Below are positions 171-48,162 of a stretch of 64,000 nt of DNA, in pieces. Location of the stretch: the NCBI RefSeq assembly GCF_046119375.1, contig NW_027362767.1, positions 421,290,001-421,354,000 of the forward strand, in the 5' to 3' direction. How positions within the stretch are numbered: position 1 is the first letter of the stretch; each line of letters opens with the position of its first letter. The position numbers and the translations under genes were made by a program. A model generated the notes under the pieces. The model had not been told where the DNA came from. It made no database searches and worked only from the letters and a program-made list of their open reading frames with translations. This stretch comes from Phyllobates terribilis. Its lineage: Eukaryota.

Positions 171-3100
171 GTAAGCGGTTGTCCTTTATCTACAGAAGGT
201 GACTCTACCCTGATAAAAATCATATTTCTGCTTCCCCCATGACGGCATCACGGAAAGAGGGGATCCGCCCTTCAAGGACAGGAAACCTACAGATAAAAGG
301 GTGGTATCTCTCTCCCTCATCAGTTGGTTTCCTGTCTGTGACGGGATCCTACAGTTCCGGAAGGAGGCATACCTGCGGGGTGCCTGAAGACTATCTTCGT
401 GGGATGCCAGGCCCCGCCAGTCCGATCCAGGCAGCGGGGAATCCCCTGCCTCGGCTGGTGCGGTGCCCTGATGCGCCACCGCTGGCATCCGTAGCCTTTA
501 GGGTGTGCGGGAGGGTGTCCAGACGAAGAGGACACGGCCTGTCGGGGCCGCTGAGGTGCTGTGCTGGACCCCCTGGTTGCGGCAGGTGGGAGCGCGGCAC
601 TGCCCGGCGGCGTTATTATGAACTTCCAGGATTGCCGTACGTGCGCGAGCGCGCCGGGCGCCTCCTGACGACCCGGCGCCGCAATGCATGACTGGGTAGC
701 CAGTCTGCGCAGGCGCAAGCATCCTCCCGCAGGTGCGGGGGAGGAGGGGGATGCCGGATCACCGCAGGCACTATGAGAGGTACTCCCAGTGCCTTAAAAG
801 ACAGCGGAGGATGCCAGGAAACTGCTTCTTAAAGCTCTGGCATGATGTCGGTAGGAAAAAAAAATATATATACAGTACAGACCAAAAGTTTGGACACACC
901 TTCTCATTTAAAGATTTTTCTGTATTTTCATGACTATGAAAATTCTACATTCACACTGAAGGCATCAAAACTATGAATTAACACATGTGGAATTATATAC
1001 TTAACAAAAAAGTGTGAAACAGCTGAAAATATGTCTTATATTCTAGGTTCTTCAGAGTAGCCACCTTTTTGCTTTGATGACTGCTTTGCACACTCTTGGC
1101 ATTCTCTTGATGAGCTTCAAGAGGTAGTCACTGGAAATGGTCTTCCAACAATCTTGAAGGAGTTCCCAGAGATGCTTAGCACTTGTTGGCCCTTTTGCCT
1201 TCACTCTGCGGTCCAGCTCACCCCAAACCATCTCGATTGGGTTCAGGTCTTGTGACTGTGGAGGCCAGGTCATCTGGCGTAGCACCCCATCACTCTCCTT
1301 CTTGGTCAAATAGCCCTTACACAGCCTGGAGGTGCGTTTGTGGTCATTGTCCTGTTGAAAAATAAATGATGGGCCAACTAAACGCAAACCGGATGGAATA
1401 GCATGCCGCTGCAAGATGCTGTGGTAGCCATGCTGGTTCAGTATGCCTTCAATTTTGAATAAATCCCCAACAGTGTCACGAGCAAAGAACCCCCACACCA
1501 TCACACCTCCTCCTCCATGCTTCACGGTGGGAACCAGGCATGTAGAGTCCATCCGTTCACCTTTTCTGCGTCGCACAAAGACACGGTGGTTGGAACCAAA
1601 GATCTCAAATTTGGACTCATCAGACCAAAGCACAGATTTCCACTGGTCTAATGTCCATTCCTTGTGTTCTTTATCCCAAACAAGTCTCTTCTGCTTGTTG
1701 CCTGTCCTTAGCAGTGGTTTCCTAGCAGCTATTTTACCATGAAGGCCTGCTGCACAAAGTCTCCTCTTAACAGTTGTTGTAGAGATGTGTCTGCTGCTAG
1801 AACTCTGTGTGGCATTGACCTGGTCTCTAATCTGAGCTGCTGTTAACCTGCGATTTCTGAGGCTGGTGACTCAGATAAACTTATCCTCAGAAGCAGAGGT
1901 GACTCTTGGTCTTCCTATCCTGGGGCGGTCCTCATGTGAGCCAGTTTCTTTGTAGCGCTTGATGGTTTTTGCAACTGCACTTGGGGACACTTTCAAAGTT
2001 TGCCCAATTTTTCAGACTGACTGACCTTCATTTCTTAAAGTAATGATGGCCACTCGTTTTTCTTTACTTAGCTGCTTTTTTTTTGCCATAATACAAATTC
2101 TAACAGTCTGTTCAGTAGGACTATCAGCTGTGTATCCACCTGACTTCTGCACAACACAATGGATGGTCCCAACCCCATTTTTAAGGCAAGAAATCCCACT
2201 TATTAAACCTGGCAGGGCACACCTGTGAAGTGAAAACCATTTCCGGTGACTACCTCTTCAAGCTCATCAAGAGAATGCCAAGAGTGTGCAAAGCAGTCAT
2301 CAAAGCAAAAGGTGGCTACTTTGAAGAACCTAGAATATCAGATATATTTTCAGTTGTTTCATACTTTTTTGTTAAGTATATAATTCCACATGTGTTAATT
2401 CATAGTTTTGATGCCTTCAGTGTGAATGTACAATTTTCATAGTCATCCCAACACAAAAAGAAGCCGGAAGGGTCGGGACACCATGACCGTAACAGTGGAA
2501 GCGGCTGCTCCGGCAGATCAGCGCAGCAAAGACTCCACCTCAGCATCTTCCAGGAGGCCTCGGTCTACAAAGATGGCTCCGCCTCCTGAACCGGTACCCG
2601 CTCTTCCGTCTGGTTGGTAAGTGATCTTCGTGAAAGTCCACTTTGTAACTAGCGGCCTCTCTCTCTCTCTCTCTCTTTTTGTCTCTCATTAGGGAAGAAA
2701 GAGCACGGGGAAAACAAAAAATTGGACCTGTGCACTATGCACAGAAGTCTTACCCACTACTTGGGATAAGAGACTCTGCAGCTCCTGCATTGAGCACACT
2801 ATATGCGAGGAAACCCCGAAATTTGCCTTTGAACTTAGAGACCTAATTAAATCGCAGGTCAAAGATACCATTAAATCCTTTCGGGGGGGGGGGGGGTGGT
2901 AAAAAGCTAAAAAAATCTAAAAACATATCCCCCCGAATAGCAGTTCTGAGAATGGCGTAGATTTGGACACTTCCGTTTCTTCATCTTCCTCTTCTTCGTC
3001 AACAGATAGAGGAGGACGGAGCCGTTTCCCTATCGAGGAAACAGCCTCATTAAGGCCGTCAGATCTACCATGGGGTTACCAGATCCCCGGCCCAAGACGT

Positions 3101-6100
3101 CTATCCAGGACATAATGTTCAGCTGTCTAGAGCAAAAAAAGAGGAGATCTTTTCCACTAAATGAGCAAGTTCATTCTTTAAGAAGGAGTGGAAAAGACCA
3201 GAGAGGAAGGGCCTCCTTTCCCCAAAGTGTAAGTACCAGTTTGATGACCCTGCATGTTCCTTTTGGGAGAAAGCTCCAAAACTGGAGGTTGCCAAAGCCT
3301 CAAAGAAATACTCCCTTCCATTTGAGGACATGGGCGTCTTAAAAGACCCCATGGATAAAAAAGCAGACTCCTTCCTGAAGGGTTCCTGGGAAGCCGCTGG
3401 GGAGGGGGGGGGGGTTAAAACCTGTGGTAGCTGCCACATGTACGGCCAGGTCATTAATGGTCTGGCTAGACCAGCTTGAAACACAACTGCGGCAGAAAAC
3501 ATCTAGAGAGACAATCCTTGAAACTATCCCGGTAATGAAAGGGGCAGCGGCCTTCCTAGCTGACGCCTCGGCGGACTCCGTCAGGTTAGGCGCTAGGGCG
3601 ACAGGGCTTGCTAATGCGGCCAGACGAGCCTTCTGGCTCAGATGTTGGCCCGGGGATCTACAGACAAAATCGAGATTGTGCTCCATCCCCTGTGAGGGCG
3701 AATTTCTATTCGGGCCCACCCTTGATGACATCTTAGAAAAAGCGGGGGACAATAAGAAGCGGTTCCCTATCCTGTCTAACACTACTTACAGAAAACCTTT
3801 TCGGAGCAAAAGGTTTATCCATAGAAAACCCCCTAAAGAGCAGGATAGGTGGGAAGACAGGAGAATAAAGAACAAAGGGTTCCTATTTAACAAACCCCTC
3901 AATGATAGCAGAAAGTCCTCCCAATGAGGATTTGCCCCGGGTGGGGGGAATTCTATCAGGCTTTCTCCCGGCCTGGGAATTAATATCAGACAGCTCATGG
4001 ATTCTGATCATAATACAATCGGGCCTGAAACTCCAATTCCTCACATTCCCTCAGCCAAACTTTTTCGTAACCCCCGAAAGGTCCTCAAACGAGGAGCAGC
4101 TGGCCTTGGAGCAGGAAATCCGGGGACTGGTAGGGAAGGTCCCGTGGGGGGAGGAAGGCAAGGGCTTTTATTCTCCGTTATTCCTAAGAAAAAAAACAGA
4201 TGGGGACGTACAGGACGATTGTAAACCTAAAAAAGCTGAACAAACTTTTGAAGGTGGAAGCCTACTAAATGGAAACCATAAAATCATCAGTAAAAATGCT
4301 GTTTCCCTATTGTTTCATGGCCGTCCTGGATTTAAAAGACTCTTATTATCACGTCCCGATACACAAAGACTACCGGAAGTTCCTCAGAGTAGCAGTTCCT
4401 ATAGGTGGAGTGGTCAAACACTATCAATATACGGCCCTCCCATTCGGCATCGCCATAGCCCCAAGGGTTTTCACCAAAATTATTGCAGACGTAATGGCTC
4501 GTCTAAGGGAACAGAACACCCTTGTCATCCCATACCTAGACGACTTCCTGGTAATAGGCAGCTCCTTCCTAAACTGCAAAACTCATCTTGGGAAGGTCAT
4601 AGATTCTTTGAGACGCTTAGGATGGCTTTTGAATCTGGAAAAATCCAAAACAGCACCGTGCCAGATACAGGAATGCCTAGGCATCATGCTGGATTCGGAA
4701 AGACAGGAGTGTCGTCTCCCCACAGGGAAAATTCACAAAATCATAGACCAGATATTGTGGGCAAAGTCCAACCCGTCTATGTCCCTACGGAAAGCCATGT
4801 CCCTTCTAGGCTCCCTGACAACATGTTTCCCGGCCGTCCAATGGGCTCAGATACATACCAGGATCCTACAGTGGGAAATCCTAGAGGCAGAAAAATCCCT
4901 AAAAGGGCATTTAGAAGGGCAGCTAACGTTATCTGCAGAAACGACACTTTCCCTGGAGTGGTGGGGGAACATAGACAATCTAGCCCGGGGTATTCCTTGG
5001 ACAATCCCTACACCTCAAATTCTGACCACAGATGCAAGTCCTGAGGACTGGGGGTCTCACCTCAACAACCTTGTAGCTCAGGGGGTCTGGACAGAATGCC
5101 TAAAGCTAGTTTCCTCAAACATGAAGGAGCTTCTAGCAGTAGAGCAGGCACTCCGGGAATTCATGCACATACTACAAGGCCACCACGTGAGGGTCTTCTC
5201 AGACAACTGAGTAGTAGTGGCATACCTGAACCACCAGGGGGGTACTCGGTCCCATTCCCTGATGCAGGCGACAGAGGTCATCTTTCACTTAACTGAGGAA
5301 AACTTACATTCCCTGTCAGCTCTACACATAAGAGGGATAGAAAATCTAACCGCAGACTTCCTGAGTCGGACACAGCTAAAGCAGGGCGAATGGGATTTAA
5401 ACCAGTCAGTTTTTCGTCAGATTGTACAAATGTGGGTACGTCCCTCCATAGATCTGTTTGCCAACAATCGAAACAAGAAAACACACACTTTCTGCTCCCT
5501 AGACCCCAAAGGAAACCCCATAGCTGTGGATGCCTTCATGATCCCATGGAGTTACCCTCTAGCTTACGCTTTTCCTCCGACCGCTCTGATTCCAGCTGTT
5601 CTGAGGAAAATCAGGGAAGAGAAAGCGAGAGTAATCTTGATAGCCCCCTTTTGACCAAAGAGGGCATGGTTTTCGTGGCTGAGGATGTTATCAATCTCCG
5701 ACCCATGGGTTCTTCCGGAGCTTCCGGACCTTCTTTCTCAGGGTCCGTTTCTCCATCCTCGGGCTTCAAACTTACACTTGACAGCCTGGAATTTGAGAGG
5801 GCTCTTCTGAAGGACAAGGGTTTCTCCCCAAATCTTATCACCACACTACTTCAAAGTAGGAAACCAGTGACCACCAAACTGTACGTGAAAACCTGGAAGA
5901 AATTCCTTTGTCTCAGGTTCCAGGTTGGGTGGGGAGGTTCCATTGACTGCTATCCTGGAATTTTTACAGAGGGGGTTGGAACAGGGTCTGGCCACAAGTA
6001 CCTTAAAAGTTCAAGTTGCAGCCCTGGGAGCGCTCTACAATTTTGATCTTGCTAGGGATAGATGGGTATCTAGGTTCATTAAAGCGTCATCCAGATCCCA

Positions 6101-9100: not shown

Positions 9101-12100
9101 GGTCCGGAGGAGAGTCTCCTGTTCTCCAAACCCGGGTACCATTCTTTTACGGTCACACTATATAAATCCATGCCGGTTGCATGGATTTATATAGTGTGAC
9201 CAAGCACTTTCCAAGTGATGCTAAAATCGCTTGTAAACCCACATGCGGAAATGCAAGTGAAGAACGCTTCACATCAGCATGTCCCTGGCAGGAAAAACGC
9301 ATGTACAATCCGCATGCGTTTTTTCTGCCAGGGAAAAATGCCAGGGAAAAATCCAGAGCATTTCTGCATCGTGGGCACATAGCCTAAAAGTACAGGGAGG
9401 AGGGGGGGTATGCAGCTGCAGCTTCTGTATGTCTGATTACATGCTGTGACAGGGCAGTTATGGTGGGAAGACACAAATATTTTCTGGCTTCTTTTTGCTG
9501 CTTGCTGATAGTTTTGGCATTAATATTAAACTTTCAGTAAAATTTTGAGTTATTTTTTGCAGCTGCATCTTCGTCTGGAAGCTGCACCCCGCCATGACCT
9601 CATGTATGAGGCACCAGCTGACGGAGATGGACACGGAGGGGAAGAGCAACGTGGACGTGACCTCTCCTGCTAATACCAGGTGAGATGAGGGCAGCGGCCT
9701 CGCGGCTCTACTCTACATGGTATACGGCCATTGGTGACTTATTCTGATGCTTCCAGGAGAGAGCCCTTCGTGGTCGGCCCCCTGGACGAAAGCTCCCAGG
9801 ATGACCTGTTCTATGAAAAAGACAGTGATGTTGATGAGCCCTCACCTGATACCCCAATAAATGACGGCTTTGAAGCAGGTAATTATCAGTCAGCCTTCCT
9901 GACCCTCCATGGACCTCTCTTGACTGTAACTGTATTTGTTTGGTTTGTTTTGTTGTTTGTTTGTCTTCGTATTATTTATTTTATTATTTAATATCTTGGT
10001 TACTGTTCAGACAGTCCCCAAGTTCTCATAAGAATCCTTCTAGTGTAAAACAGGTGAGAGTAGGGAGAGGAGGGGGATGCAGCTGCAGCTTCTCACTCCT
10101 TCATTCACAGTGTGGGAGGGTCCACATAGTAAATATCTGATTGGTTGAGAGCATATTAGAACCCGCCCACTGAGGAGGGAAAGCGGGAAGGACCCAGTTT
10201 CTGTAGTTCTCACATCTCTGCCACGTTTGGTCTTGCTATCAGTACTCGGAGTTGACCGTCTCGTGTGGCTTTTGTCGCTGACCCCTATATGAAGAAGAAA
10301 GCTGCTGTAGCATTATATACCAGATCTGTATCCACCTTTCTGTCTCGCTCATGGGTGAGAGAACAGTGAAGTCTCCCCGGAGGCCGTGTCCTTTTGGCTA
10401 TATGACTGGCGGTGGCCTCATGTCTGCTGTTCTGCTTATGGGATACGGGGTCTTCTGGGTCAGTGTTACTAATAAGACCCTTTTTTTTTATTCTAGATCC
10501 CACCTTTCTGCATACTAATGGCAAACTCCCAATGTGGGTGAGGAAGCTGGTAAGTCGGGCGATGGTTTGATGTTGTAGACCTGACAGGCGGCACATAACA
10601 TTTTACATAATATGGAGAAAAGACCCAGGAGGATACGAGTCTTCTGTAATTACATGCAGAAGAGGCAATGCTTCCTGGGAAAAGTATGCAAATCAGCTCT
10701 CCTCCAGAGGGAAATACTATTATGGAACTTAAAAGGAAGGGAGGAAATAAAAATGGATCCATCTCCATGGCGTTAATGGCATCTCGATCACCTCTGTGCT
10801 GACGAGGAGCAAAACCCCAGGCATAGTGCTGACAACGGATGGGTTTCAGTGATGTCTCATCATGATTCAAGGCTCCATAATGGGTCCGGTGTTGTCTTAT
10901 AAGATGGCCACCAATAGGTGGCACTGGAGACAGTTTCCTTCCTTGTGGCGGAGAGCTAATTTGCATGCCTGTAAGGCCCGCGCACCAGAATTGACAGTTG
11001 GTCGCCTTTTTGGGGCAGGGTCGATGCCTCTCGTCTGCATTGGGAGGTAAATATAAGTATTGGTTCCACCTGTTCTCCGGGGTTATAGGATAAAGACAAG
11101 AATGAACCCCTGGTCGTCCTCTCCCAAAATCATTACCAGCCTCAGGGACGTTGGAACCAAAGCGACACCGGCGCCATCCTGATCCGAAACTTCTTGAACG
11201 ACAGTGATCTTAGTTACTGCTGTACCCCGGACCACGAGCCGGGAGCGCACTCCTTCCTGGACGACACTACGGACATGGAGGGAGTGGAGCCCAGAAGTCT
11301 GCAGGAACTGCTGGAGGTGAGTGATGAGGCTCCGCTGAGGTGAGTGATGAGGCTCCGCTGAGGTGAGTGATGAGGCCCCGCTGAGGTGAGTGATGAGGCC
11401 CCGCTGAGGTGAGTGATGAGGCCCCGCTGAGGTGAGTGATGAGGCCCCGCTGAGGTGAGTGAGATGCTCCAGGGCAGCACAAGATGATGGTGCAGTCCTG
11501 ACACTGGGGTGACTGAGGCCGTGCAGCCCACCCTGGTATGTCTGTATGGGTCTATCTGAGGCTGTTCCCTGCCCCTCCATATCCCACTCATAGGGGTGCA
11601 CCTGCCTCTGTGCAGATAAGGTATCTTCCTCCATTCCCACCACCTCCATTGGCCGTGTGAGCAAGCTTTTCGCTTAAAGGGGTATTCCCACCTCCAACAT
11701 CCTATCCCAATATGTAGTAGGTATAATAATATTAGTAAATACCTCCAATTAGAAATGTAGTATAGTTCTCCTGATTCACTATGTCGCTTACCCCATGTAC
11801 AGGGCATTGCAGTAGCTTAGGTATCCATGGTTACATCCACTCATATAGCAACATTTAGACAGCTCTTAGTGGTCGTAACCATGGAGGTAACATGGGGTCA
11901 GCGACATAGCAAACCTGAAGAACTGTACTACATTTCTAATTGGAGGTATTTGCTAATATTTTTTATTATTATTCCACCTACTACATATTGGGATAGGATC
12001 TTGGAGATGGGAATACCCTTTTAATGTAGATCGGACCCCTGGCCCAGCAAGGGTTTAACCATTTCAGTTATCGTCTTATCACAACATGGCTTTAAAGGGG

Positions 12101-15100
12101 TTTACCCACAAAATATACAGTATTAACCCCCCTATGCATAAGTGATAAATGTATGAGAGCGGAGGGCCGACCACAGATGATAAGGGCGTAGGGACCCAAA
12201 GTCTCCTGTGTGAATGTAACAGGAGTGTGCGTGCCGGACCACCGCTCTATACGCTTCTATGGTCTGGTAGTGTGCGTGCTGGATCACCTCTATATACACT
12301 TCTATGGACAGGTATTGTGTGTGCCGGACCACCGCTCTATACACTTCTATGGACTGGTATTGTGCGTGCCGGACCACTTCTCTATACACTTCTATGGACT
12401 GGTATTGTGCATGCTGGACCACGCTCTATACACTTCTATGGACTGGTATTGTGCGTGCCGGACCGCTTCTCTATACACTTCTATGGACTGGTATTGTGCG
12501 TGCTGGACCACGCTCTATACACTTCTATGGACTGGTATTGTGCGTGCCGGACCACCGCTCTATACACTTCTATGGACTGGTATTGTGTGTGCCGGACCAC
12601 CGCTCTATACACTTCTATGGACTGGTATTGTGCGTGCCGGACCACTTCTCTATACACTTCTATGGACTGGTATTGTGCATGCTGGACCACGCTCTATACA
12701 CTTCTATGGACTGGTATTGTGCGTGCCGGACCACTTCTCTATACACTTCTATGGACTGGTATTGTGCGTGTCGGACCGCTTCTCTATACACTTCTATGGA
12801 CTGGTATTGTGCGTGCTGGACCACGCTCTATACACTTCTATGGACTGGTATTGTGCGTGCCGGACCACTTCTCTATACACTTCTATGGACTGGTATTGTG
12901 CGTGTCGGACCACCGCTCTATACACTTCTATGGACTGGTATTGTGCGTGCTGGACCACGCTCTATACACTTCAATGGACTGGTATTGTGTGCGCTGGACC
13001 GCTTCTCTATACACTTCTATGGACTGGTATTGTGTGCGCCGGACCGCTTCTCTATACAATTCTATGGACTGGTATTGTGTGTGCCGGACCGCTTGTCTAT
13101 ACACTTCTATGGACTGGTATTGTGTACGCCGGACCGCTTCTCTATACACTTCTATGCACTGGTATTGTGCGTGTCGGACCACCGCTCTATACACTTCTAT
13201 GGACTGGTATTGTGCATGCTGGACCACTGCTCTATACACTTCTATGGACTGGTATTGTGCATGTCGGACCACCGCTCTATACACTTCTATGGACTGGTAT
13301 TGTGCATACTGGACCACCGCTCTATACACTTCTATGGACTGGTATTGTGCGTGCCGGACCACTTCTCTATACACTTCTATGGACTGGTATTGTGCGTGTC
13401 GGACCGCTTCTCTATACACTTCTATGGACTGGTATTGTGCGTGCTGGACCACGCTCTATGGACTGGTATTGTGCGTGCCGGACCACTTCTCTATACACTT
13501 CTATGGACTGGTATTGTGCGTGCTGGACCACGCTCTATACACTTATATGGACTGGTATTGTGTGCGCCGGACCGCTTCTCTATACACTTCTATGGACTGG
13601 TATTGTGTGCGCCGGACCGCTTTTCTATACACTTCTATGGACTGGTATTGTGTGCGCCGGACCGCTTCTCTATACACTTCTATGGACTGGTATTGTGCGT
13701 GTCGGACCACCGCTCTATACACTTCTATGGACTGGTATTGTGCATGCTGGACCACTGCTCTATACACTTCTATGGACTGGTATTGTGCGTGTCGGACCAC
13801 CGCTCTATACACTTCTATGGACTGGTATTGTGCATACTGGACCACCGCTCTATACACTTCTATGGACTGGTATTGTGCGTGCCGGACCACTTCTCTATAC
13901 ACTTCTATGGACTGGTATTGTGCGTGTCGGACCGCTTCTCTATACACTTCTATGGACTGGTATTGTGCGTGCTGGACCACGCTCTATACACTTCTATGGA
14001 CTGGTATTGTGCGTGTCGGACCACTTCTCTATACACTTCTATGGACTGGTATTGTGCGTGCTGGACCACGCTCTATACACTTCTATGGACTGGTATTGTG
14101 TGCGCCGGACCGCTTCTCTATACACTTCTATGGACTGGTATTGTGTGCGCCGGACCGCTTTTCTATACACTTCTATGGACTGGTATTGTGCGTGTCGGAC
14201 CACCGCTCTATACACTTCTATGGACTGGTATTGTGCATGCTGGACCACTGCTCTATACACTTCTATGGACTGGTATTGTGCGTGTCGGACCACCGCTCTA
14301 TACACTTCTATGGACTGGTATTGTGCATGCTGGACCACTGCTCTATACACTTCTATGGACTGGTATTGTGCGTGTCGGACCACCGCTCTATACACTTCTA
14401 TGGACTGGTATTGTGCATACTGGACCACCGCTCTATACACTTCTATGGACTGGTATTGTGCGTGCCGGACCACTTCTCTATACACTTCTATGGACTGGTA
14501 TTGTGCGTGTCGGACCGCTTCTCTATACACTTCTATGGACTGGTATTGTGCGTGCTGGACCACGCTCTATACACTTCTATGGACTGGTATTGTGCGTGCC
14601 GGACCACTTCTCTATACACTTCTATGGACTGGTATTGTGCGTGCTGGACCACGCTCTATACACTTATATGGACTGGTATTGTGTGCGCCGGACCGCTTCT
14701 CTATACACTTCTATGGACTGGTATTGTGTGCGCCGGACCGCTTTTCTATACACTTCTATGGACTGGTATTGTGCGTGTCGGACCACCGCTCTATACACTT
14801 CTATGGACTGGTATTGTGCATGCTGGACCACTGCTCTATACACTTCTATGGACTGGTATTGTGCGTGTCGGACCACCGCTCTATACACTTCTATGGACTG
14901 GTATTGTGCATGCTGGACCACTGCTCTATACACTTCTATGGACTGGTATTGTGCGTGTCGGACCACCGCTCTATACACTTCTATGGACTGGTATTGTGCA
15001 TACTGGACCACCGCTCTATACACTTCTATGGACTGGTATTGTGCGTGCCGGACCACTTCTCTATACACTTCTATGGACTGGTATTGTGCGTGTCGGACCA

Positions 15101-18100
15101 CTTCTCTATACACTTCTATGGACTGGTATTGTGCGTGCTGGACCACGCTCTATACACTTCTATGGACTGGTATTGTGTGCGCCGGACCGCTTCTCTATAC
15201 ACTTCTATGGACTGGTATTGTGTGCGCCGGACCGCTTTTCTATACACTTCTATGGACTGGTATTGTGCGTGTCGGACCACCGCTCTATACACTTCTATGG
15301 ACTGGTATTGTGCATGCTGGACCACTGCTCTATACACTTCTATGGACTGGTATTGTGCGTGTCGGACCACCGCTCTATACACTTCTATGGACTGGTATTG
15401 TGCATGCTGGACCACTGCTCTATACACTTCTATGGACTGGTATTGTGCGTGTCGGACCACCGCTCTATACACTTCTATGGACTGGTATTGTGCATACTGG
15501 ACCACCGCTCTATACACTTCTATGGACTGGTATTGTGCGTGCCGGACCACTTCTCTATACACTTCTATGGACTGGTATTGTGCGTGTCGGACCGCTTCTC
15601 TATACACTTCTATGGACTGGTATTGTGCGTGCTGGACCACGCTCTATACACTTCTATGGACTGGTATTGTGCGTGCCGGACCACTTCTCTATACACTTCT
15701 ATGGACTGGTATTGTGCGTGCTGGACCACGCTCTATACACTTATATGGACTGGTATTGTGTGCGCCGGACCGCTTCTCTATACACTTCTATGGACTGGTA
15801 TTGTGTGCGCCGGACCGCTTTTCTATACACTTCTATGGACTGGTATTGTGTGCGCCGGACCGCTTCTCTATACACTTCTATGGACTGGTATTGTGCGTGT
15901 CGGACCACCGCTCTATACACTTCTATGGACTGGTATTGTGCATGCTGGACCACTGCTCTATACACTTCTATGGACTGGTATTGTGCGTGTCGGACCACCG
16001 CTCTATACACTTCTATGGACTGGTATTGTGCATACTGGACCATCGCTCGATACACTTCTATGGACTGGTATTGTGCGTGTCGGACCACCGCTCTATACAC
16101 TTCTATGGACTGGTATTGTGCGTGTCGGACCGCTTCTCTATACACTTCTGTGGACTGGTATTGTGCGTGCTGGACCACGCTCTATACACTTCTATGTACT
16201 GGTATTGTGCGTGCCGGCCCACTGCTCCGTTCATCTGTCTGCCCCAGCACATAGTGGTGGTTTTGCAGCGATTTCCTACTGTGCATGCGATCACAGCTAG
16301 ACCCCCGATCTTCCGGCTCCCACCTCCTGGTCCCGGCCCCCGTCAGGGTGCGACCCCTGAATACTCCAGTCCGGCTTTGATTCTCAGAACTTTTCTCCTC
16401 TCTTCAGGTCGAGGATGGAAACAACTTTGTGGACAACAGGACGTTCATCACCGAGGCGGCGTCTGCATTAGACGAGACAGACGTTCAGTCCCAGTCCTCA
16501 GAGTCCAACGGTATCTACTACCCGTCGTCTCTGCACGTGACCCTGCAGGAAGAAAGGTAACCGATGAGTATCTGGGCTGTAGTCTGTACTGTGCCCCTCT
16601 GGTATCAAATATTATGTCCCCGTCTTCAAGTAGTCCCGGCGGGCTGTCCCCCTTCCCCTTGCGACCACTCGCTTCCCCCTGCTGTTCATCTACGTGCAGG
16701 CGCAGAGTAAGAGAGGCAGAGACATACAAAAAGTGCTGCTGCTACCTAGTAAGTGTTTATCTTAGCCAAGCAATAGATTCACAGCTACACTTCTCAGTAC
16801 TGCTGTTTGATACTAAAAAATGGCAGCATGTATGGTATCATACAGCAGTACTTATCATTGAATCCAGCACTGCGGTGAGAAATACTCAGTACTAAACAGC
16901 AGCATACCAGGTATAATACAGCAGTACTGAGCAATGTACCTGTGAATCCAGCACTGGGGTGAGAAATGCTTACCTTCTGTGCTGCTGTTTTGTAGTGCGT
17001 ATTTCTCACCCCAGGGATGGATTCACAGCTGCACTGTGATATATTTTCCATGCTGCTATTTTGTAGTATATCATATCACAGTGTAGCTGTGAATCCATCC
17101 CTGGGATGAAAAATACTCACTACGAAACGGCAGCATGGAAGGTAAGCATTTCTCACCCCCAGTGCTGGATTCACAGCTACATTACTTAGTACTGCTGTAT
17201 TATACCTTCCATGCTGCTGTTTTGTAGTCAGTATTTCTCACCCCAGTGCTGGATTCACTGCTAAGTACTGCTGTATGATACTACAAAATGGCAGCATGTA
17301 AGGCATCATACAGCAGTACTGAGCAGTATAGCTGTGAATCCATCCCTGGGGTGATTTAATTCTCGCTACAAAATAGCAGCATGGAAGGTAAGCATTTCTC
17401 ACCCCCAGTGCTGGATTCACAGCTACACTGCTCAGTACTGCTGTATAGTATCCTTCATGTGCTAATTAGAGGCAGGAATCCCTCATGTCTATGTGTGCTG
17501 TGTATGGGAGACACCATAGCAGTTAGTCTCCATCCACCAGCTCAAAGAGACCTGAAAAGTAGAGACGGGAAAAACTGGTGAAAAGTCAAAGATACAAGTC
17601 ATATAATGGCTAGAAATGGTGTTATTCCTCTTGTGCACATAGGACGGCTTATTCTGATCAGTCACCTAAATGGACAGTTACTTTAATGTTATATAATATG
17701 TTGGGTTTTTTTCTTCTATTTTTCAGTTATTTTTCTATTGAAGAACGGACTTTTGACAAGGGCAATGCCGCACTCATGGATGGGCTGTTAATCGGCTGTG
17801 ACCCAGGTAACTGCCGACACTACTGATAACTATTTCCTCTCATCTTGTCTATCTTACACTATATCTGGAGTTATCGCTGAGTATGTACAAGGTACATTTG
17901 TATTCATATTGTGTTATTAACTATGACTAAACAGCTTCTAATCTTAATCAGCCAGACATCTAGATTTGTTAAGCCAAGAGAAATACCCTATTTTTTGTGT
18001 TGACTTGTGAATGTATATGTATTTCTGTGGCTGGTCAAGAAGGACAGACCAGTATTTGTATAACAATGATTGTTGTCTTCTCTTGGTTCTGAAACAATGA

Positions 18101-21100
18101 TGTTTGTTATTATTCTAATTGCATATTATACTAAAGCCATCGTTTTGTAAAAGCCGGAGCCCCGCCCCTTGCATAGTTTCCTATGTGGCGGTCTCTGGGA
18201 AAATGGCCGCCGGAGGCGGTGCATGCGCAATGGAGATCTCAGTGCCGAGATCTCAATCTGCGCATGCACCGCCTCCGGCGGCCATTTTCCCGGACTTTCC
18301 AGCACTACTAGCTGCCTAATGTAAAATAGAAGGCAGGTCAGTTGAACGATCAGTGAGTTGTTAAAAGAGCATACAGATGAATATGTAAGCAGAGCACCAG
18401 ATAGAGCGCCCCCCACAGGCCACCCTGGAGCACGAGCATATCATTATCTCCAAACTGAAAATAAAGATTAAACAAGAACCACAGGACGGATTTCAGCAAC
18501 CAAGGTATCATTTTAATCAGTGTAATGTTGCCCACCTGACAGTGAATGTAGTTTACTGAACACAATCCTGCTGACAGGTGCGCTTTAAGGAAAATATGCT
18601 TCTGTAGCAGGCAGATTTGAAACAGATTTGAAAGAGACTTTACAAGGAGAATCAAAGATCAGACTCTTTTTCAGACCATCAGCTTGGTAGCATGGCTTTA
18701 TCCAAAGAGACACAGATTTGGATTCTACATGATTCCAGCCTAAGGGTATCGGTCCTGACTGGAAAGATGCGTATCTGCTCCATTGACCATCAGAGAGCCC
18801 ATGGATACATTTGGGGAGATCAGGTTGGGACGATGAAGTCACCTGGCCCCATGGATATGTTGTTTGGGGTTGCCAGGTGGGAACCTTCGGTCGCCTGGAA
18901 CCCATGGAGACATTCAGAGAAGCCAGATTGGGACCAACAAGTCATCTGGCCCCATGGAAACTCGGAGAGGTCAGGGGTGGGACTCTCGAGTGTCCTGGCA
19001 TTGTACCTCGATAGACTGTCAGCTTCCTAAGCTTGCCACTACCTTCTCTCTGTGAGGGCCCGCCAAAAGTGGGGGGCCACTGGTTGTGGTAGTTGGCCCT
19101 GGAAGACCTAAAGTCGCAGCTGTTCTATCCCAGGCGGGCGGAGAAGGAAGGGTGAGACTGTGTAATGTTGTACCATCTTGGGTACTTGCTGGAACTGTTC
19201 TATATGTTATTGTCTGTTTGGTGGTTCAATAAAGTATTGCCACAGTTTTACCCGCACCCTGTGTTGTCTGAGTAGTATTACGCCCACGGAAGACCGCTTG
19301 TCTTCGCATTAACCTTCATGCGCTTGTGGCTGTGCCTGGTAATGCAGCCCTGTCCTATTTTAGTGATTGGGTCAATACCAGTCATGGCCACCAGTAGAGG
19401 TATGGAGCTGCACCTTGTAGTTGGTTGAGGTGTCTGAAATCTGATTATTGGAGCGATCTGAGGGCCAGTCATCCCCTGATCAGATTCCTTCAGCTGCAGG
19501 CGGAGTAGTCCCTGAACTAACTGCTGCAAGTGGACTATGAAAGCTGCTTTTCTAATGCTCCGTTTTGTCTCTTCCTATTGGTCACCTTTTTTTGTAGAGA
19601 GAGCCCCTTTATAAGCATTGTCTCCCATCTGTTAGTGTGTGTGATTTGGTCATCAGATACACTCACATTGTCCGGACTTTTCCATAACTTGGATCGTGCA
19701 TTTTATTTTTGCAGATGAAGATTCGCTGATGTCGGAAGCGGAGCTGGATGATGATGATCCTGAGGAGAACCTCCACCCGGAGACCCCAGAACAGGAGAGA
19801 TTTCTGCAGATGCACTTCGACACGTTGGCTGATGATCTGGCTGCAGGTGACCATGGTGTCCTGAAGCATCAGATCTGTATTTTATCGGGCACACTACAGG
19901 AGAGACAGCCTGACCATTTATCCTCACCGAGGTCCTCAAGCTGTGGCTTAAAAAAATACTAAAACTCCCAGCATGGGAATTTGTGACTCTCTCTCCTTTC
20001 ATAGTGTAGAAACCTGGTGAAAGTGTGAAGTGACAGCCGACCTTTCAGCTGTGGTTTGTGGGGTCTGGCACGCACAGCCACACACACTTGTTTTTTTGCA
20101 GAAATCAGGGTGGTCTTCTACCACTTTTGCCTGGTTTCAGGACAGCACCCTCGATGCTTCTGTTAGACCTAGCGATCACATGATCGCTGAGCATCTGCCC
20201 GACATACAAGAGCTTCTGGGTCCTAACACTCTCCAGATCAGCTCTGCCAGTGACTTCTGCAGTCGGCTGGTATCCCCTGGCACTGCCGGTGACTTCTGCA
20301 GTCGGCTGGTATCCCCTGGCACTGCCGGTGACTTCTGCAGTCGGCTGCTATCCCCTGGCACTGCCGGTGACTTCTGCAGTCGGCTGCTGTCCCCTGTCAC
20401 TGGGGCTCCTATGGATGTCAGAGTTACAGTGGGGAAAAAAAAAAAAAATAGAATACATGATTAAAAAAAAAATAAAGAACCAGATGTATCACACCAGCTA
20501 TAAAGAAAGCAAAAATTAAATCTAAAAATATACCCTAGATTATATATATTTTTTTATTAAAATACATTTTAGTAGATAACCTACACAAATTAGGAATTCA
20601 CACAGCAGGTTATTTGGTGTTATAGGTGAACGGTAAAAAAAAAACACAGCTGCTAATTTATTTGCATTGCCAAAAATAGCCAGAACAATGGTGCTAAAAA
20701 ACTATACAACATCTTCCTCTTGAAACAAGACCTCATACAGAAAGAAAATGTCAGATGAAATATGCGCGTGCTTGGGGTCAATTTGACAATTCTGGGAATT
20801 TCACTTTAACCCCTTAATGACTATTGATAGAGCTATCTATTACCGTATATTATTTTTATTGTTTTACTTTTTTTGGACTCTACGTTCCAGCTGCCATACT
20901 TATTTCCCCCCCCCACACACACACACTGACGTGGCTGTGTGGTAGAAATTTGTATTTTTCGGCGCTGTTTTTTTTTTTTTTTTTTTTCCTTTGCCTTGCA
21001 AAAGTAGAATGAAGAAATGTTTTGGGGATTTTTGTATTTTTTTTTTCTTTTTTTTTTTCTTTTTCACCTTTTATGTGGATACTTCATCTGTTTAGGTTTT

Positions 21101-24100
21101 TTTTTTCCCTGTAAGTTCTCTCTAAGGGAACCCCAGCAATCTAGAGGACAGGACGCTACAGAGTCCGATCTTGAGGGCTTGAGCGGAGGTCGAGCATGCG
21201 AAGCGCTGCACTCGACTTTCTCTCGCTCTCATAGAGAATGAATGGAGCGGCGGTCGAGCATGTGGAGCGCTGCACTCTGCTTTTTCCAACCGTGCCATGG
21301 AGATTGAATGGAGCGGCGTCGAGCATGTGGAGTGCTCCACTCTGTCCATCAGTCTCATAGAGAATGAATAGAGCGGCGGTCGAGCATGTGGAGTGCTCCA
21401 CTCTGTCCATCAGTCTCATAGAGAATGAATAGAGCGGCGCTCGAGCATGTGGAGCGCTGCACTCTGCTTTATCCTTCAGTCCCATGGAGAATGAATGGAG
21501 TGAAGGTCGAGCATACGCACCACTGCTCCATACAAGACGGTGTCTCTGCAGCTCCCTGTTTTCGGAGAGACTTAAGATTCTGTAATATAATATTATATTC
21601 CGGTGTTGTCTGTGCAGAGAAGTTTGACAACTCGCTGAAAGATCTGCAGCCGGATGAGGACGATGAGACGCTGAACCCGCGCCTGAGTTTCTCTTCTAGA
21701 TTCTTATCCCGGAGTCTCAGGATGAACGGGTAACTCATCCCATTCTACAGGTCACAGCAGCTGCTTCAGGTTACAACATCTCTTGATAGTGTTCTCCTTT
21801 ATTCTACAGGACAGGATTTGCCTTTGTACCTGGCACCCTCAAGATGGCGACAGCAGTCAGCAGTGATACCAAAGTAGAACCGGAGCGATCACAGAGGACA
21901 CCAGATGTAAGAGGAGGCATTTCAGTCATAAAATCGATGGTTACAGCTGAGTCCACTTCTGTTTTTTTTTTTCTTTTTTACCTTCACAATTACATATTTA
22001 AAATATTGGTGGGGGAAGCGATACACATCTAGTGGGTGCAACACTGCAACCGGTGATTGCCTGCAGCGGTCACATGATATCAGCAGGAAAACTGACAGTA
22101 GCAGAACATGAGTGGGGTGAGTGTTGCTATATTTGCTCAAGCTTAGCCTCTGAGCTCAGTGATTGACTGCAAGACTGTCCATGTGAGGTCACCGCTGCAG
22201 CCAAACATCAGAGACTTAGAGCAACAGCGAAGACTCGGCGATGGTCCGGGGGAGGGTAAGTAAAGCACTTCTTTTTTTTTTTCATCTTTTTTTTGTTCCT
22301 TTTTAACACTAAACAGCCAGTGGACAGCAGACTGATGAAAGCGTCAACGCCTTTAAATCACTAATAAATACGATTTTATAAATATATTATATTACATATA
22401 TTTTTTTAATGTTTTATGGAAGAGGCCTGCAGAAAAGGCACCAGAGAGAACTGAAAGGAGAAAGTCTGAAAAAAACGCAGGTAAGTCCCCCTGGGGGTTT
22501 ATCTGCAGCTTCTTTACATCAGATCCCTTTGTTCTGACGTCGTCAGCCGGACCACCATGCACCCAGGCTGGTGGCGAATTTTAGCATCTAAGGAGAACAG
22601 GAAATAAAAATCATTATTTTAATCGTCTGCTTGGGAAAAAAATATAATCAAGTAATTCTCGGACGATCCTTGCTGGTCTGTGATTCCAGGTCACGTTGTC
22701 GACACACACACCGGTAATGTCCGCCATTCATCGGCTGCAGCGGTGAATCGAATCAGGACTAGGATGCACAGACCAGCAGACCCCGAGTGAGAATACAAAT
22801 TTTGCACATAAAATTATTTATTATTTCCTCCTCATATTTTCCATTTTTAGAGTTGAAGAACAGAGGTTGCGATCTTTGGTGTTCCTGGTTTCATAGAACA
22901 TAGTGGTGGGGGGAGGCTTCTGCTGCAGAGAGTTGTCTTACAGCAGGGATGTCAAACTGAAATACAGAGAGGGCCATAATAAAAAAAAAAAAAACTTGGA
23001 CAAAGTCTCGGGCCAAACTTTATATCTATTAAGAGCCTCCACACAGTATAATGGGCCCCACATATTCCTCCATACAGAATAATGGGCCCCACGTAGTCCT
23101 CCATACAGTATAATGACCCCACATACTCCATACAGTATAATGGGCCCCACATAGTCCTCCATACAGAATAATGGGCCCCACATAGTCCTCCATACAGAAT
23201 AATGGACCCACATGGTCCTCCATACAGTATAGTGGGCCCCACATGGTCCTCCATACAGTATAGTGGGCCCCACATGGTCCTCCATACAGTATAGTGGGCC
23301 CCACATGGTCCTCCATACAGAATAACGTGGGGGAGGGAGCGCTGCCGGTATTGCGGGCCAGATTTGGCGTCCTGGGCTAGAGTTTGACATGTGTCTTACA
23401 GCAAGAGAGCAGTTTGTGTGAAGGAAGAGGGACTGAAAGTGACTGATCTGGGCACGCGTCTAGAATTCTTTATGCATTTCTTTCAGAAATCAAAGAAAAA
23501 GAGCAATATATTGAAAATTTCCGGATACTTTTTATGAATTTCTTGTTTTTTTTTCTTGTTTTTTTTTTTTTTTTCTCTCTGATTTTCGATGTTTTGAGTC
23601 TGCTTTTAATTTGCGCCTTTTTTAAAGTCATTTTATGTCCTTGTCTATCATTTATTTTTTTTTCGATTTACAGTTTGTCCAGAAATCTCAAATTCCACGT
23701 CCAGTGTGCAAAAACTTCAAGTGAGCGAGAAGGCGTCCTCCTCCCGATCTTCGTTCCCCGGCTGTTGGCCGAATAAGAACAAATCCAGTAGGTGCCGATC
23801 TTACATGGAGGCCACTGCTAGTTTCAAGGCAAAAATATTTCGTAGCGTATCGATGGGAGAAAACCTCAATGGCGGCCAAGCAGAGGAGCACCGGCAGCTG
23901 TCTTGCATGTCCCGGCCTCTGTCTAGTATAGACTTACCCTCCCTAGAACAGAACAAGTTTCTTCCCGCTGAGGACGACCCCCATAAGCCTCTCCTCTCCT
24001 CTGTTTCTTACGAGCAGATCTCCTCCTTACACCAAGAGAGAGTAAAGTCTTCAGTCCTCTCCCCCAATCCTGTAAGTGATAAGCTTCTAATGCCGCCGCC

Positions 24101-27100
24101 GTCCTCCTTCGGATTTATCCCTCGCCTGAAGAAAAAGGCCAAATCTGTCAATAACCTATCGAAGATGTCTAAAAAGGAGGAGATGAAGCCCAAAGGTGGA
24201 GATGTCCAAAAGAACGTCCCTGCCCTGGAAATGCAGAAAAGAAGAAACTCCTCATCGGTCGATCGGCCACTGGAGATCCAGGACTTCCCCAGAAGAGCGT
24301 CCATAGCAGAACTTCCAAGCCACGCAAGTGCCAGTCTCCATACAAGCAGCCTTGTCATGGAAGAGGCCAACATCCCAAGAAGTGGCCCGTCCTCCCCAGA
24401 AGCGACTTCATGTAGCTGTCCTGGAGAACCAGGTAAAGAAGGACGACTCCAGTGAAAAACTTTAGAATTTCTCCTCTTCTGTTCCCCTTGTCATGCTCAA
24501 AAGTGTAAAAGCCATCCCACCGCGAAAAGGTGTACCCATCGTGATGGTTCCTAACTCAAGTTACTCACCACGTGATGTGCCTGCAGACCTCAAAATAGAC
24601 TGGGGCAGAACAGGACCTGGGCCCGGCTGTCTCACACCTGCCAATGGAAAGCCATATAGACAAGTTGCAGAACTCAAAAGGGCGGACCACGTCCCTATGG
24701 CCTGCTGGCACATAGGTGAGATAGTAGAGCTGAGACCATCCTGACTGGGTACACCTTGTCGCGGTGGGATGACTTTTTCACTTGATATTTACATGTATTA
24801 TTACTATTTACTTACTGCAGGGTATATATTCATTTGTTTTTATTCTAGATTTCATCTAGTTGAAGGGATAAAATTGCAAAGTGCTTGTAAAAACTAGCAA
24901 CGTTGCAATTCACATCTCCGTTCTTAAGAACAGAAGGATTTTTTCACTTTATAGTTTGATTGTTGCCTTGGTTATCGGCCACCTCTGCGGTTTATTCGTG
25001 GTGGACAGTTTACTAGGCAAGAAGCACGCGTTTGTAAGTGCTGCTCTGGAGCTGCGTGGAGGAGTGGTATGCTCCTAGAGAAAGAAGATGATGATGATAC
25101 TTTTTTTTTTCTCAAACCCCTTTAAAAGAATAATGCATACTAGTTGCACCCGGAGGACCCCTTTTAATGAGGGCTTGAACTTTAGATTAGGTTTATACAA
25201 GTTGATACATGCCATTCAGTGACCTAAACCATAATCTGCCTCTGGCCTTTGTCAGATGTGGAGGTCCTGGCGAGCCGTTGTGAGCAAGTAGTGGAGGAGC
25301 TTCACGACATCTTCCAAAAGACTCTACAGACCTACAAAGAGGTAAGTAATGGAATGTTTCTATGGGAGGACCACCCCGTCTAAAATCCTATTTTTCACTG
25401 CAATTTGAAAGGTTATCTCCAGAGGTTTTCTCTGTCTTATACATTAATATCTTTTAAGAAATTGACTCTGGGTACAGGATGCCGTCACCAAGAGGCTGAC
25501 ACGAAAAATGTAAAAATGTTGTCCCACCTATACAGGCACTGAGCTACGCCAGTTTTCTGCTTTTTTTCTATATTTGTTCTTTGTTGGGGTCTGTATCCAT
25601 GTTATTCCCACTAATGCAGGATGCAAGGTGCCTCCGCTGCTCCTCTGGCACTCAGAAACATAAGGGTCAGCCAGGTTCCCATCTGCTCCCGACCAGTGCC
25701 CCCTCACACTAGAGAGGCACACCGGCTGCTCTCTACTGGGAGCTGACTACAAGGATCCTAGGGAAATAAATGTGACTCCACCAGCTCTCAAGACCCATCC
25801 AAACAGCCCTTAGTAGCCCCTCTTACAAGTGCTTGTGCCTTGTAAAGCCCTCAGCTACATCCATACTCTGGCAATCAATTTGGGTCTTGCTGAATTCTTT
25901 AGCAGCGGACCTGTTCTGCACTTGGACCGTAACACTACGTTCTCTTGTGGTCAGTCTGATCCTCTGTGTAAAGTCCCACACAACTCCTTTTAAGGCCTTT
26001 GCTTCGCATTCTGAGTTTGAGGAGGTCATCCAAAAAGAATGGAAGACCCCAGACAAGACCTCCTTCTCTTGTGATAAACATTCAAACCTCATGTATCCCC
26101 TTCGAGAAGAGATTATTTCTAAGTGTTTCCAAGTCTCCAGCAGTGGTTCCTCTTGGATTTACCCTCCTAGTTTTTCATCTGGCCAAGATGCCTACTAATC
26201 CCATGGTGGATGCAGCCTCCTGTTGAAGACCTGAGAGGTCTTCCTTTGAGACAACAGACTTGGCTTTTGGGCAGACTGGTTCTGCCAACTCCACCATGAT
26301 GGCCTTTCTGCCACAACACAGGAAAAACAGGAGGTCTGTTCTCTTATACTGAGAAGTACTTTTTTTGCCCTTTTCTGCGACTTATCTCCTGCACCTCGGC
26401 TACGGTGGTTGCCATCTGCAGATCTGCCTTCGTCAAACGCCTATCGGCAGTAAAAACTTATAACAGCTCTTTAACAGCTTGGTCTTTTTGAAGGTTCCAT
26501 TCTTTTCTGGCCCAAGTGAATGAGAATATATCTGAAGCCTTAAACTAGAGTTATTCGCCCCAGACCAGGACCCGTTTCGTTGGCCCTTCCGGGAAAAAAC
26601 AAACTCCGGTTCCATTCTCTTCACAACTTTGCAAACCCTCAGTCCTCTCAACATAACGTGCAGCAGGAAGCAAATAAGAAAGATTCCTTCATTTTGTTTC
26701 CTCTCCCATCCATCCATGAAAAGGTGGTCATTCCCTTACCACCAGGCTAAGGATTCATGTTTTTTTAACTGGCCACGGATCATTTCACTCTCCCTTCCTG
26801 ATCCCCCACCAAGATAAGGTGGTGCTTAGTCCAGCTCCATCCTTTCTGTCTATAGTGGTTTTCCCCTTCTACTTAAATGAGGGTACAGTTTTGCCCCAGA
26901 TCTGCCCATCCCCATCTCGTCCTTTTGAACATTCCCTATGCAATCTTGCTGTTTCTTCTGCCTTAAACATATCCCTGTCCCTCAACTCCCCATCTGCCAT
27001 TTGGACTCACTCTTCATTGTTCCAGAACATCCGTGGAATGGTCTTCCTGGGCTATGTGTCATTCAGGCTCTGTTTTCCAAGTGTGCAAGGTGATAGTTGC

Positions 27101-47694: not shown

Positions 47695-48162
47695 TAGCCA
47701 CCAGTACTCTTAATTGCGACTTGGCAGCAAATAAATGGATACTAGATTTGTTAAAGCTTGCAATAGATCTAGACCCATTCCTACTCCAAGGATGCCTCCA
47801 TGGGACCTTAATCTGTTTCTGGAGGCACTAACCAAGCCTCCCTTTGAGCCCTTAGAGAAGGTTTCAGAGAAAGTTCTCACCTTTTTAAAACAGTCATGCT
47901 GGTAGCACTTATGTCAGGCTGTAGGATTAGTGATCTGCACGCACTATCGGTAAACCATCCGTTCACATAGGTTTCTACGGACAAAGTAACTTTAAGACCA
48001 GACCTGGTCTTAATCTTCCAAAAGTAGCCTCCAAATTCCACAGGACACAAGTAATTACTCTCCCTTCCTTCTATCCTGACCCTAGAAATTTGAAGGAACA
48101 AAGGCTTCACACGCTAGATGTTAAAAGGGTATTAGTCCAGTACTTGGAGGTGACGCTTTATC

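What the first reader, a model, noticed from the sequence alone, without database searches (positions are those of the whole stretch)
11314..11460. A tandem repeat that multiplies a real splice donor seven times
The 23-bp unit begins with the last codon of the exon, so identical GAG|GTGAGT donors occur at 11317, 11340, 11363, 11386, 11409, 11432 and 11455. Only the first is productive. Donor 2 adds 23 nt and frameshifts to a TAG in the next exon; donors 3-7 include the in-frame TGA at 11341-11343. Six equally strong decoys could divert transcripts to nonsense-mediated decay, making copy number a dosage control, or the U1-site array could act as a splicing enhancer (inference). WDR62 is a known spindle/microcephaly gene, so dosage could matter if function is shared.
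Basis: partly seen in the sequence, partly recalled or inferred. Interest (0 to 1): 0.72.

Follow-up and report, generated by a model that had tools for sequence, protein, structure and literature searches.

The report
Splice-donor minisatellite in frog WDR62 intron
A short tandem repeat at the start of an intron of a poison frog's WDR62 gene copies the splice signal seven times, but assembled RNA shows the first copy in use, as in a repeat type already known from human genes such as F7, so it is real but ordinary.

Summary
A 23-bp unit is repeated 6.5 times at 11314-11462 and places the identical donor GAG|GTGAGT at seven positions. The gene is the WDR62 orthologue of a dendrobatid frog. Only the first donor keeps the frame: donor 2 leads to TAG at 16469-16471, and donors 3-7 include TGA at 11341-11343.

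In four RNA samples from two studies, the long spliced contig leaves the genome at 11316/11318, which is donor 1. No contig lies on the rest of the array. Orthologous proteins of nine other frogs join the same two exons.

The array is lineage-specific. Dendropsophus and Engystomops have a 75-nt intron with one donor at this position. Hymenochirus and Ascaphus also have one donor and no repeat. Minisatellites fill about a quarter of this gene's sequence in the window, so one overlapping a donor is not surprising.

The kind is known. The human F7 IVS7 minisatellite and similar arrays in IFI6, CBS, LMNB2 and PDGFA reiterate a donor, and the upstream copy is used. Earlier notes of this scan report the same arrangement at five other genes of this genome.

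Dosage control by decoy donors is unsupported but not excluded, because only contigs were available, not raw reads. Verdict: a new member of a known kind, of low interest.

The parts
11089..11316 (+). WDR62 coding exon (228 nt, 76 aa, phase 0 to 0) ending in ...CTGCTGGAG
   Evidence: tblastn of frog WDR62 proteins. Spliced RNA contigs cover 11088-11318 with 0 mismatches in 4 runs and join 10548 to 11088/9.
11314..11462 (+). 23-bp minisatellite of 6.5 units whose first unit spans the exon-intron junction
   Evidence: TRF score 284, 99% matches; the repeat finder register.
11317..11318 (+). GT of the authentic, most upstream donor (GAG|GTGAGT); the one used in RNA
   Evidence: Contigs of X3, X4, X15 and X16 end their match at 11318. 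The 2-nt overhang is explained by the next exon starting with GT. Orthologues read LLE|xEDGNNF.
11340..11456 (+). Six reiterated pseudo-donors with GT at 11340, 11363, 11386, 11409, 11432 and 11455, each with the identical 9-mer
   Evidence: No RNA contig lies on 11319-11655 (tables 2 and 8).
11341..11343 (+). In-frame TGA that any transcript spliced at donors 3-7 would include
   Evidence: Frame arithmetic.
16469..16471 (+). TAG reached in the +2 frame if donor 2 were used
   Evidence: Frame arithmetic.
11317..16407 (+). Intron of 5,091 nt; the orthologous intron is 75 nt in two other hyloid frogs
12226..16227 (+). 45-bp (134-bp higher-order) satellite of about 89.5 copies that makes up most of the intron
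   Evidence: TRF.
16343..16407 (+). Remnant of the 3' part of the ancestral short intron, with polypyrimidine tract and acceptor
   Evidence: Local alignment to the Dendropsophus and Engystomops 75-nt introns.
16408..16556 (+). Next WDR62 exon ([13 protein letters not shown]...), phase 0 start
   Evidence: tblastn; sequence at the acceptor and at the donor.

Best explanation
This is a young, lineage-specific minisatellite. It arose by slipped-strand or unequal duplication of the first ~23 nt at the exon-intron junction of an intron of WDR62 in a dendrobatid poison frog. Because the unit contains the donor, the splice signal GAG|GTGAGT is present seven times. The splicing machinery uses the most upstream copy, the ancestral in-frame one, to make the stable mRNA. 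The six downstream copies behave as largely silent pseudo-donors, as in the human F7 IVS7 minisatellite. The array is most likely a tolerated by-product of a repeat-prone genome, not a regulatory device. Shown here: the anatomy, the frames, use of donor 1 in assembled RNA, and absence of the array in other frogs. Inferred: the origin by slippage, neutrality, and the reason the upstream copy wins. That reason could be 5'-to-3' oriented selection or exon definition, as proposed for F7, or capture of the first emerging 5' splice site by U1 travelling with the polymerase.
For: - Array and donors.
- Frames.
- RNA: in 4 runs (2 studies), one long spliced contig (2.6-4.3 kb, depth 17-29) matches 11088-11318 with no mismatch and then continues off the stretch. 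Depth in bin 11280-11373 equals that single contig's contribution, and depth is 0 over 11374-11655.
- Orthologue proteins of Ranitomeya, Anomaloglossus, Bufo, Dendropsophus, Engystomops, Leptodactylus, Pelodytes, Rhinophrynus and Ascaphus join the same two exons.
- There is a single donor and no tandem repeat at the orthologous junction in Dendropsophus, Engystomops, Hymenochirus and Ascaphus. The intron is 75 nt in the first two.
- Unit 1 aligns to the start of that ancestral intron, and 16343-16407 aligns to its end.
- Units are 99% identical, which indicates a recent origin.
- Six separate minisatellite arrays cover roughly 7 kb of the ~31 kb of this gene in the window.
- Literature: donor-spanning minisatellites in F7, IFI6/6-16, CBS, LMNB2 and PDGFA. 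In F7 the most upstream of identical sites is used exclusively, also for sites raised to CV 91 (PMC1557585).
Against: - Only Logan contigs were available. They drop rare variants, and NMD would remove decoy products, so low or moderate use of donors 2-7 is not excluded.
- Work on duplicated strong 5' splice sites in globin and adenovirus substrates finds nearly exclusive use of the intron-proximal (downstream) site at separations of 45 nt or more (PMC3413131). That rule predicts the opposite choice here.
- In IFI6 and CBS, the two pseudo-sites nearest the authentic donor are used (PMC1557585).
- This donor (8 of 9 consensus positions) is stronger than any identical-site series tested in F7.
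- Copy number was not verified in DNA reads.
Confidence: 0.75

Rival explanations
1. The decoy donors are used by a sizeable fraction of pre-mRNAs. The products carry premature stops and are degraded by NMD, so the array lowers WDR62 output in proportion to copy number.
For: - All seven 9-mers are identical and strong.
- No RNA structure masks the downstream copies (fold z +1.3).
- In vitro and HeLa work favours the intron-proximal site among strong duplicates at 45 nt or more (PMC3413131).
- IFI6 and CBS use their two nearest pseudo-sites (PMC1557585).
- NMD would hide such products from contigs.
Against: - No contig with any part of 11319-11373 appears in four samples, although the gene is covered at depth 17-29.
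- The F7 minisatellite shows exclusive upstream use in several cell types.
- The array is not conserved.
- A dosage function would need selection on copy number, for which there is no evidence.
Confidence: 0.14
2. The array of U1-binding sites acts positively. It either enhances recognition of the upstream exon and donor, or suppresses premature cleavage and polyadenylation in an intron that has grown from 75 nt to 5.1 kb.
For: - A downstream 5' splice site bound by U1 stimulates definition of the upstream exon (PMC8724738).
- The intron expanded about 70-fold in this lineage.
Against: - This is pure inference; no test was possible.
- The array is young and not conserved.
- Other introns of the gene that carry large repeats have no such array.
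- One consensus-like donor should suffice for both effects.
Confidence: 0.06
3. The copy number, or the array itself, is an assembly artefact.
For: No DNA reads could be laid on it, and RNA contigs do not cover it.
Against: - The array is short (149 bp).
- It has an ordered internal variant pattern, two T-units then C-units, and clean unique flanks.
- Flanking exon sequence matches RNA contigs without mismatch.
- Earlier notes report similar arrays elsewhere in this genome.
Confidence: 0.03

Closest known systems
Human F7 (coagulation factor VII) IVS7 37-bp VNTR minisatellite (Borensztajn et al. 2006, PMC1557585)
   Same: In both, the first monomer spans the exon-intron junction. In both, the authentic donor is followed by several pseudo-donors identical in sequence (4-8 in F7, 6 here). 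In both, mature RNA uses the most upstream copy, and use of most downstream copies would disrupt the frame.
   Different: - The unit is 23 bp, not 37 bp.
- It contains 3 exonic nt, not 4.
- The donor is much closer to consensus (GAG/gugagu against UGG/gugggu, CV 74).
- The intron is 5.1 kb and mostly satellite.
- Polymorphism and activation of pseudo-sites after loss of the first donor are shown for F7 and untested here.
- The host is a frog gene of the spindle-pole/centrosome pathway.
Human IFI6 (6-16) intron 2 and CBS IVS13 donor-containing minisatellites (as summarised in PMC1557585)
   Same: A minisatellite reiterates the donor at an exon-intron border.
   Different: In those genes the two pseudo-sites nearest the authentic donor are constitutively used. 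Here no such isoform was seen in contigs, and any such product would carry a premature stop.
Duplicated strong 5' splice sites in model pre-mRNAs (Hodson et al. 2012, PMC3413131, citing Cunningham et al. 1991)
   Same: Several identical, U1-complementary 5' splice sites compete for one 3' splice site.
   Different: In those substrates the intron-proximal (downstream) site wins once sites are 45 nt or more apart. Here the stable mRNA uses the most distal (upstream) site, although donors 3-7 lie 46-138 nt downstream.
Donor-spanning arrays noted by this scan in the same genome (NKAP, NDUFA1, BSPRY, EMC1, MRPS18C)
   Same: They show the same arrangement in the same genome, with first-copy use reported for three of them.
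   Different: Those arrays are mostly longer (15-107 copies) and several sit at first exons. They are AI notes that I did not re-test.

Membership tests
Donor-spanning minisatellite (F7 IVS7 type) | Tandem array whose first monomer spans an exon-intron boundary | tested here: met
   The array at 11314-11462 starts 3 nt before the exon end at 11316.
Donor-spanning minisatellite (F7 IVS7 type) | [quoted passage not shown] | tested here: met
   The 9-mer GAGGTGAGT is identical at all seven positions.
Donor-spanning minisatellite (F7 IVS7 type) | Only the most upstream donor is used physiologically | tested here: inconclusive
   Assembled RNA contigs of 4 samples use donor 1 and none covers the array. 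Contigs cannot exclude minor or NMD-degraded isoforms.
Donor-spanning minisatellite (F7 IVS7 type) | Copy number polymorphic between individuals (VNTR) | not testable with these tools
   No DNA run or raw reads were offered, and k=31 contigs cannot resolve 23-bp units.
Donor-spanning minisatellite (F7 IVS7 type) | Pseudo-donors become active when the upstream copy is inactivated | not testable with these tools
   This needs minigene mutagenesis.
WDR62 (MABP1/WDR62 family) | Orthology to proteins named WDR62, with the family's WD40 domain | tested here: met
   - Exons in the window align at 84% identity to a Ranitomeya protein and 75% to Anomaloglossus WDR62-like.
- They align at 66-69% to Bufo, Dendropsophus, Engystomops and Leptodactylus WDR62; the names come.
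- Exon 7559-7678 matches PF24782, the MABP1/WDR62 second WD40 domain, at E 8e-17.
- The window holds only the C-terminal half of the gene.
- The paralogue MAPKBP1 was not compared directly.

The most novel reading that the evidence does not exclude
Because these donors are near-consensus and up to 138 nt apart, a substantial share of WDR62 pre-mRNA may be spliced at downstream copies and destroyed by NMD. Repeat number would then set the output of a spindle-pole gene. This natural array, with the other such arrays in this genome, would settle in vivo which rule governs choice among identical 5' splice sites, upstream scanning or intron-proximal preference.
Probability: 0.08. Interest if true: 0.6.

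Novelty: new member of a known kind. Interest (0 to 1): 0.22.

Why it matters
The finding changes little by itself. It is one more case of a minisatellite that reiterates a splice donor, an arrangement described in human F7, IFI6, CBS, LMNB2 and PDGFA.

Its modest value is as a natural test case. The donors are stronger than in F7, are spaced 23 nt apart and feed a 5-kb intron, yet the stable mRNA still uses the first one. That agrees with the upstream-wins rule and not with the intron-proximal rule from model substrates.

Earlier notes of this scan report the same arrangement at five other genes of this genome. If they hold, the genome offers a series of such natural experiments that raw RNA reads could exploit. 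The locus also documents a roughly 70-fold growth of an ancestrally 75-nt intron.

Tried and rejected
- **Short protein fragments.** The search for homologous proteins with the exon plus read-through ORF (11089-11340) was meant to fish short fragments from DNA or RNA contigs of the same or related species. It found no candidate.
- **Ranitomeya protein as query.** The same tool with residues 1-200 of that protein returned only the query itself.
- **DNA of the closest relatives.** This was not obtainable. For Ranitomeya imitator the file is too large. For Anomaloglossus the gene range exceeds 100 kb. The Bufo and Leptodactylus proteins are not on record. The array therefore cannot be dated within Dendrobatoidea.
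- **Sequencing runs.** The look-up of sequencing runs returned only Logan contigs, with no raw reads and no DNA runs. Minor isoforms and copy number stayed untested.
- **Laid stretch.** I laid 9400-12200, not 11000-16900, to avoid the 4-kb satellite, which the tool says it turns away.
- **RNA folding.** Folding of 11260-11520 showed no structure beyond shuffles (z +1.3). Masking of the decoys by structure is rejected.
- **Rfam.** The search gave only sub-threshold archaeal C/D-box sRNA matches (24 bits against a gathering score of 41). They arise because each unit holds UGAUGA and CUGA. A snoRNA reading is rejected: the box spacing is too short, the score is below threshold and no RNA covers the array.
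- **Papers not held.** Roca/Krainer/Eperon 2013, Eperon 1993 and 2000, and Turri 1995 are not in the library.
- **Joined model.** Frames across the junction were computed by arithmetic only.

Full report
**Observation**

The sequence at 11314-11462 is a clean tandem repeat. TRF reports period 23, 6.5 copies, 99% matches, no indels and score 284.
- The 9-mer GAGGTGAGT starts at 11314 and then every 23 nt up to 11452, so a GT follows GAG at 11317, 11340, 11363, 11386, 11409, 11432 and 11455.
- All seven copies share GAGGTGAGTGA.
- The first two units read GGCTCCG and the later ones GGCCCCG. This ordered pattern fits stepwise expansion.

**The gene**

An exhaustive protein search with the exon translation found four relatives.
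- The best hit is a 645-aa Ranitomeya imitator protein at 86% identity.
- A more distant hit is Ascaphus truei XP_075464840.1, named WD repeat-containing protein 62 isoform X1.
- A word-index search added WDR62 of Anomaloglossus, Bufo, Dendropsophus, Engystomops, Leptodactylus, Pelodytes and Rhinophrynus.
- tblastn of these proteins on the window gives 84% identity to Ranitomeya, 75% to Anomaloglossus and 66-69% to the other hyloids. The window is therefore from a dendrobatid frog other than R. imitator.
- The mapped exons include 9560-9675, 9753-9876, 10495-10548, 11089-11316, 16408-16556, about 17725-17805, 19714-19845, 23673-24440, 25255-25344 and 30480-30713.
- Exon 7559-7678 matches Pfam PF24782, the MABP1/WDR62 second WD40 domain.

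**Frames**

The exon ends with a complete codon (GAG, Glu) at 11316, and the next exon begins in phase 0 at 16408 (VEDGNNF...).
- All frog orthologues read ...LLE followed by S/V/C/T-E-D-G at this junction.
- Without building a joined sequence, frame arithmetic shows that donor 2 adds 23 nt and meets TAG at 16469-16471.
- Donors 3-7 include TGA at 11341-11343.

**RNA evidence**

It returned only Logan contig sets, eight of which hold the exon almost completely.

I laid four of them (X3 and X4 of study P1, X15 and X16 of study P6) on 9400-12200.
- In each run, one long contig (2,197-4,337 nt, depth 17-29) shows GT..AG joints 9675>9753, 9876>10495 and 10548>11088. These runs are therefore RNA.
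- Each contig matches 11088-11318 without a mismatch and then continues with sequence that is not in the stretch (tables 5 and 8).
- The match ends at 11318 and not 11316 because the next exon also begins with GT.
- Depth in bin 11280-11373 equals exactly the share contributed by that single contig, and depth is zero from 11374 to 11655 in all four runs.
- The assembled WDR62 mRNA therefore uses donor 1 in four samples of two studies.

Two limits apply. Contigs drop rare variants, and products of donors 2-7 would be NMD targets, so minor use is not excluded.

**Origin and age**

I fetched the orthologous loci of four frogs.

| Species | Junction | Intron length | Tandem repeat |
|---|---|---|---|
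| Dendropsophus ebraccatus | GAG\|GTGAGTGAC | 75 nt | none seen in the 75-nt intron (read directly) |
| Engystomops pustulosus | GAG\|GTAAGTGAC | 75 nt | none seen in the 75-nt intron (read directly) |
| Hymenochirus | GAG\|GTAAGA | not determined | none |
| Ascaphus | GCG\|GTTAGT | 1,641 nt | none |

- The first unit of the array (11317-11338) aligns to the first ~24 nt of the 75-nt intron.
- 16343-16407 aligns to the remainder of that intron, up to the acceptor.
- The ancestral short intron was therefore split by about 5 kb of inserted and amplified repeat, and its 5' end was multiplied.
- The near-identity of the units indicates that this multiplication is recent.
- DNA of the closest relatives could not be obtained, so the age within dendrobatids is open.

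**Base rate**

Between 11 kb and 30 kb, the introns of this gene hold six separate minisatellite arrays:
- 23 bp x 6.5
- 45 bp x 89.5
- 39 bp x 4.1
- 61 bp x 5.3
- 31 bp x 9.5
- a CT-rich array of ~22-25 bp spanning about 2.4 kb

Together they cover roughly 7 kb of about 31 kb. In such sequence, an array that happens to include one of the roughly twelve donors is not improbable.

**What is known**

Borensztajn et al. 2006 (PMC1557585) describe exactly this arrangement.
- In human F7 the first 37-bp monomer of the IVS7 VNTR holds the last 4 bp of exon 7 and the donor.
- Four to eight identical pseudo-sites follow, and only the most upstream site is used.
- The pseudo-sites are functional when the upstream ones are inactivated.
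- Identical sites raised to a consensus value of 91 still do not compete.
- The authors list further cases. In IFI6/6-16 there are 25 pseudo-sites and the two nearest are used. In CBS IVS13 two pseudo-sites are used. In LMNB2 and PDGFA only the authentic site is used.
- The frog donor GAG/gugagu differs from CAG/gugagu (value 100 in that paper) only at position -3 and is better than UGG/gugagu (91). It therefore lies, by inference, above the range tested for identical sites.

Hodson et al. 2012 (PMC3413131) give the opposite rule. [quoted passage not shown] The frog mRNA follows the F7 rule. This could reflect 5'-to-3' selection or exon definition, or capture of the first emerging site by the transcription machinery (the title of PMC8316553, seen, points that way). 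These mechanisms are inference.

**Alternatives examined**
- Folding gives no structure that would hide the downstream donors (z +1.3).
- Rfam returns only sub-threshold archaeal C/D-box matches, caused by UGAUGA and CUGA in each unit. I do not take them as a gene.

**Earlier notes of this scan**

Notes retrieved report donor-spanning arrays at NKAP, NDUFA1, BSPRY, EMC1 and MRPS18C in the same genome, with first-copy use in RNA for three of them. They pointed me to F7, IFI6 and CBS, and I checked that literature claim in PMC1557585. I did not re-test the loci themselves. This kind of feature has therefore been found before by the scan, on other DNA of this genome.

**Verdict**

This is a new member of a known kind: a tolerated, young donor-spanning minisatellite. 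Interest is low.

Noticed in passing
window 11317-16407; L003 23510-23584; L004 17868-17942: The orthologous intron is only 75 nt in Dendropsophus and Engystomops but 5,091 nt here. The two ends of the ancestral intron are still recognisable at 11317-11338 and 16343-16407, so about 5 kb was inserted or amplified in the middle.
   Followed up: partly
window 12226-16227: A 45-bp satellite of 89.5 copies, with a 134-bp higher-order period, makes up most of the intron. It keeps long stop-free reading frames in several frames only because of its composition.
   Followed up: partly
window 11656-12031: This intronic stretch has enormous summed contig depth (10^3 to 10^5) in all four RNA runs, made of many short contigs at 95-99% identity. 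It is evidently a very abundant, transcribed interspersed repeat. Its only Rfam match is a meaningless sub-threshold one.
   Followed up: no
window 11340-11455: Each 23-nt unit contains UGAUGA and CUGA, the C and D box motifs. This gives sub-threshold Rfam matches to archaeal C/D sRNAs (sR3, 24 bits against a gathering score of 41). It is most likely coincidence.
   Followed up: partly
window 20244-20402, 21181-21514, 23036-23325, 27159-29557: Four more minisatellites lie in later WDR62 introns: 39 bp x 4, 61 bp x 5, 31 bp x 9.5, and a CT-rich array of ~22-25 bp spanning about 2.4 kb. N runs interrupt and follow the CT-rich array. None spans an exon boundary.
   Followed up: no
window 61530-62486 (-): An intact 319-aa ORF matches Pfam 7tm_4 (olfactory receptor) at E 3e-46, downstream of WDR62.
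   Followed up: partly
window 1055-1870 (-), 55219-56435 (-), 4269-5207 (+), 45600-49500 (+): There are Tc1/mariner-type transposase ORFs (HTH_Tnp_Tc3_2 and DDE_3) and retroelement ORFs with reverse transcriptase and RNase H. The 55219-56435 and 45600-49500 elements were judged from their ORF translations only, not scanned against Pfam.
   Followed up: partly
window 9676-9752: RNA contigs of all four runs remove a 77-nt intron (GT..AG) between 9675 and 9753. Short introns of the ancestral size therefore persist next to the expanded one.
   Followed up: no
P0012 (Leptodactylus fuscus WDR62), residues about 886-900: The annotated protein reads LLE-VSDGRDPPPPATD at this junction, with six extra residues compared with other frogs. 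Its first three residues equal the translation of GTGAGTGAT. This could be an annotation that reads into the intron or a real difference. No DNA was on record to check.
   Followed up: no
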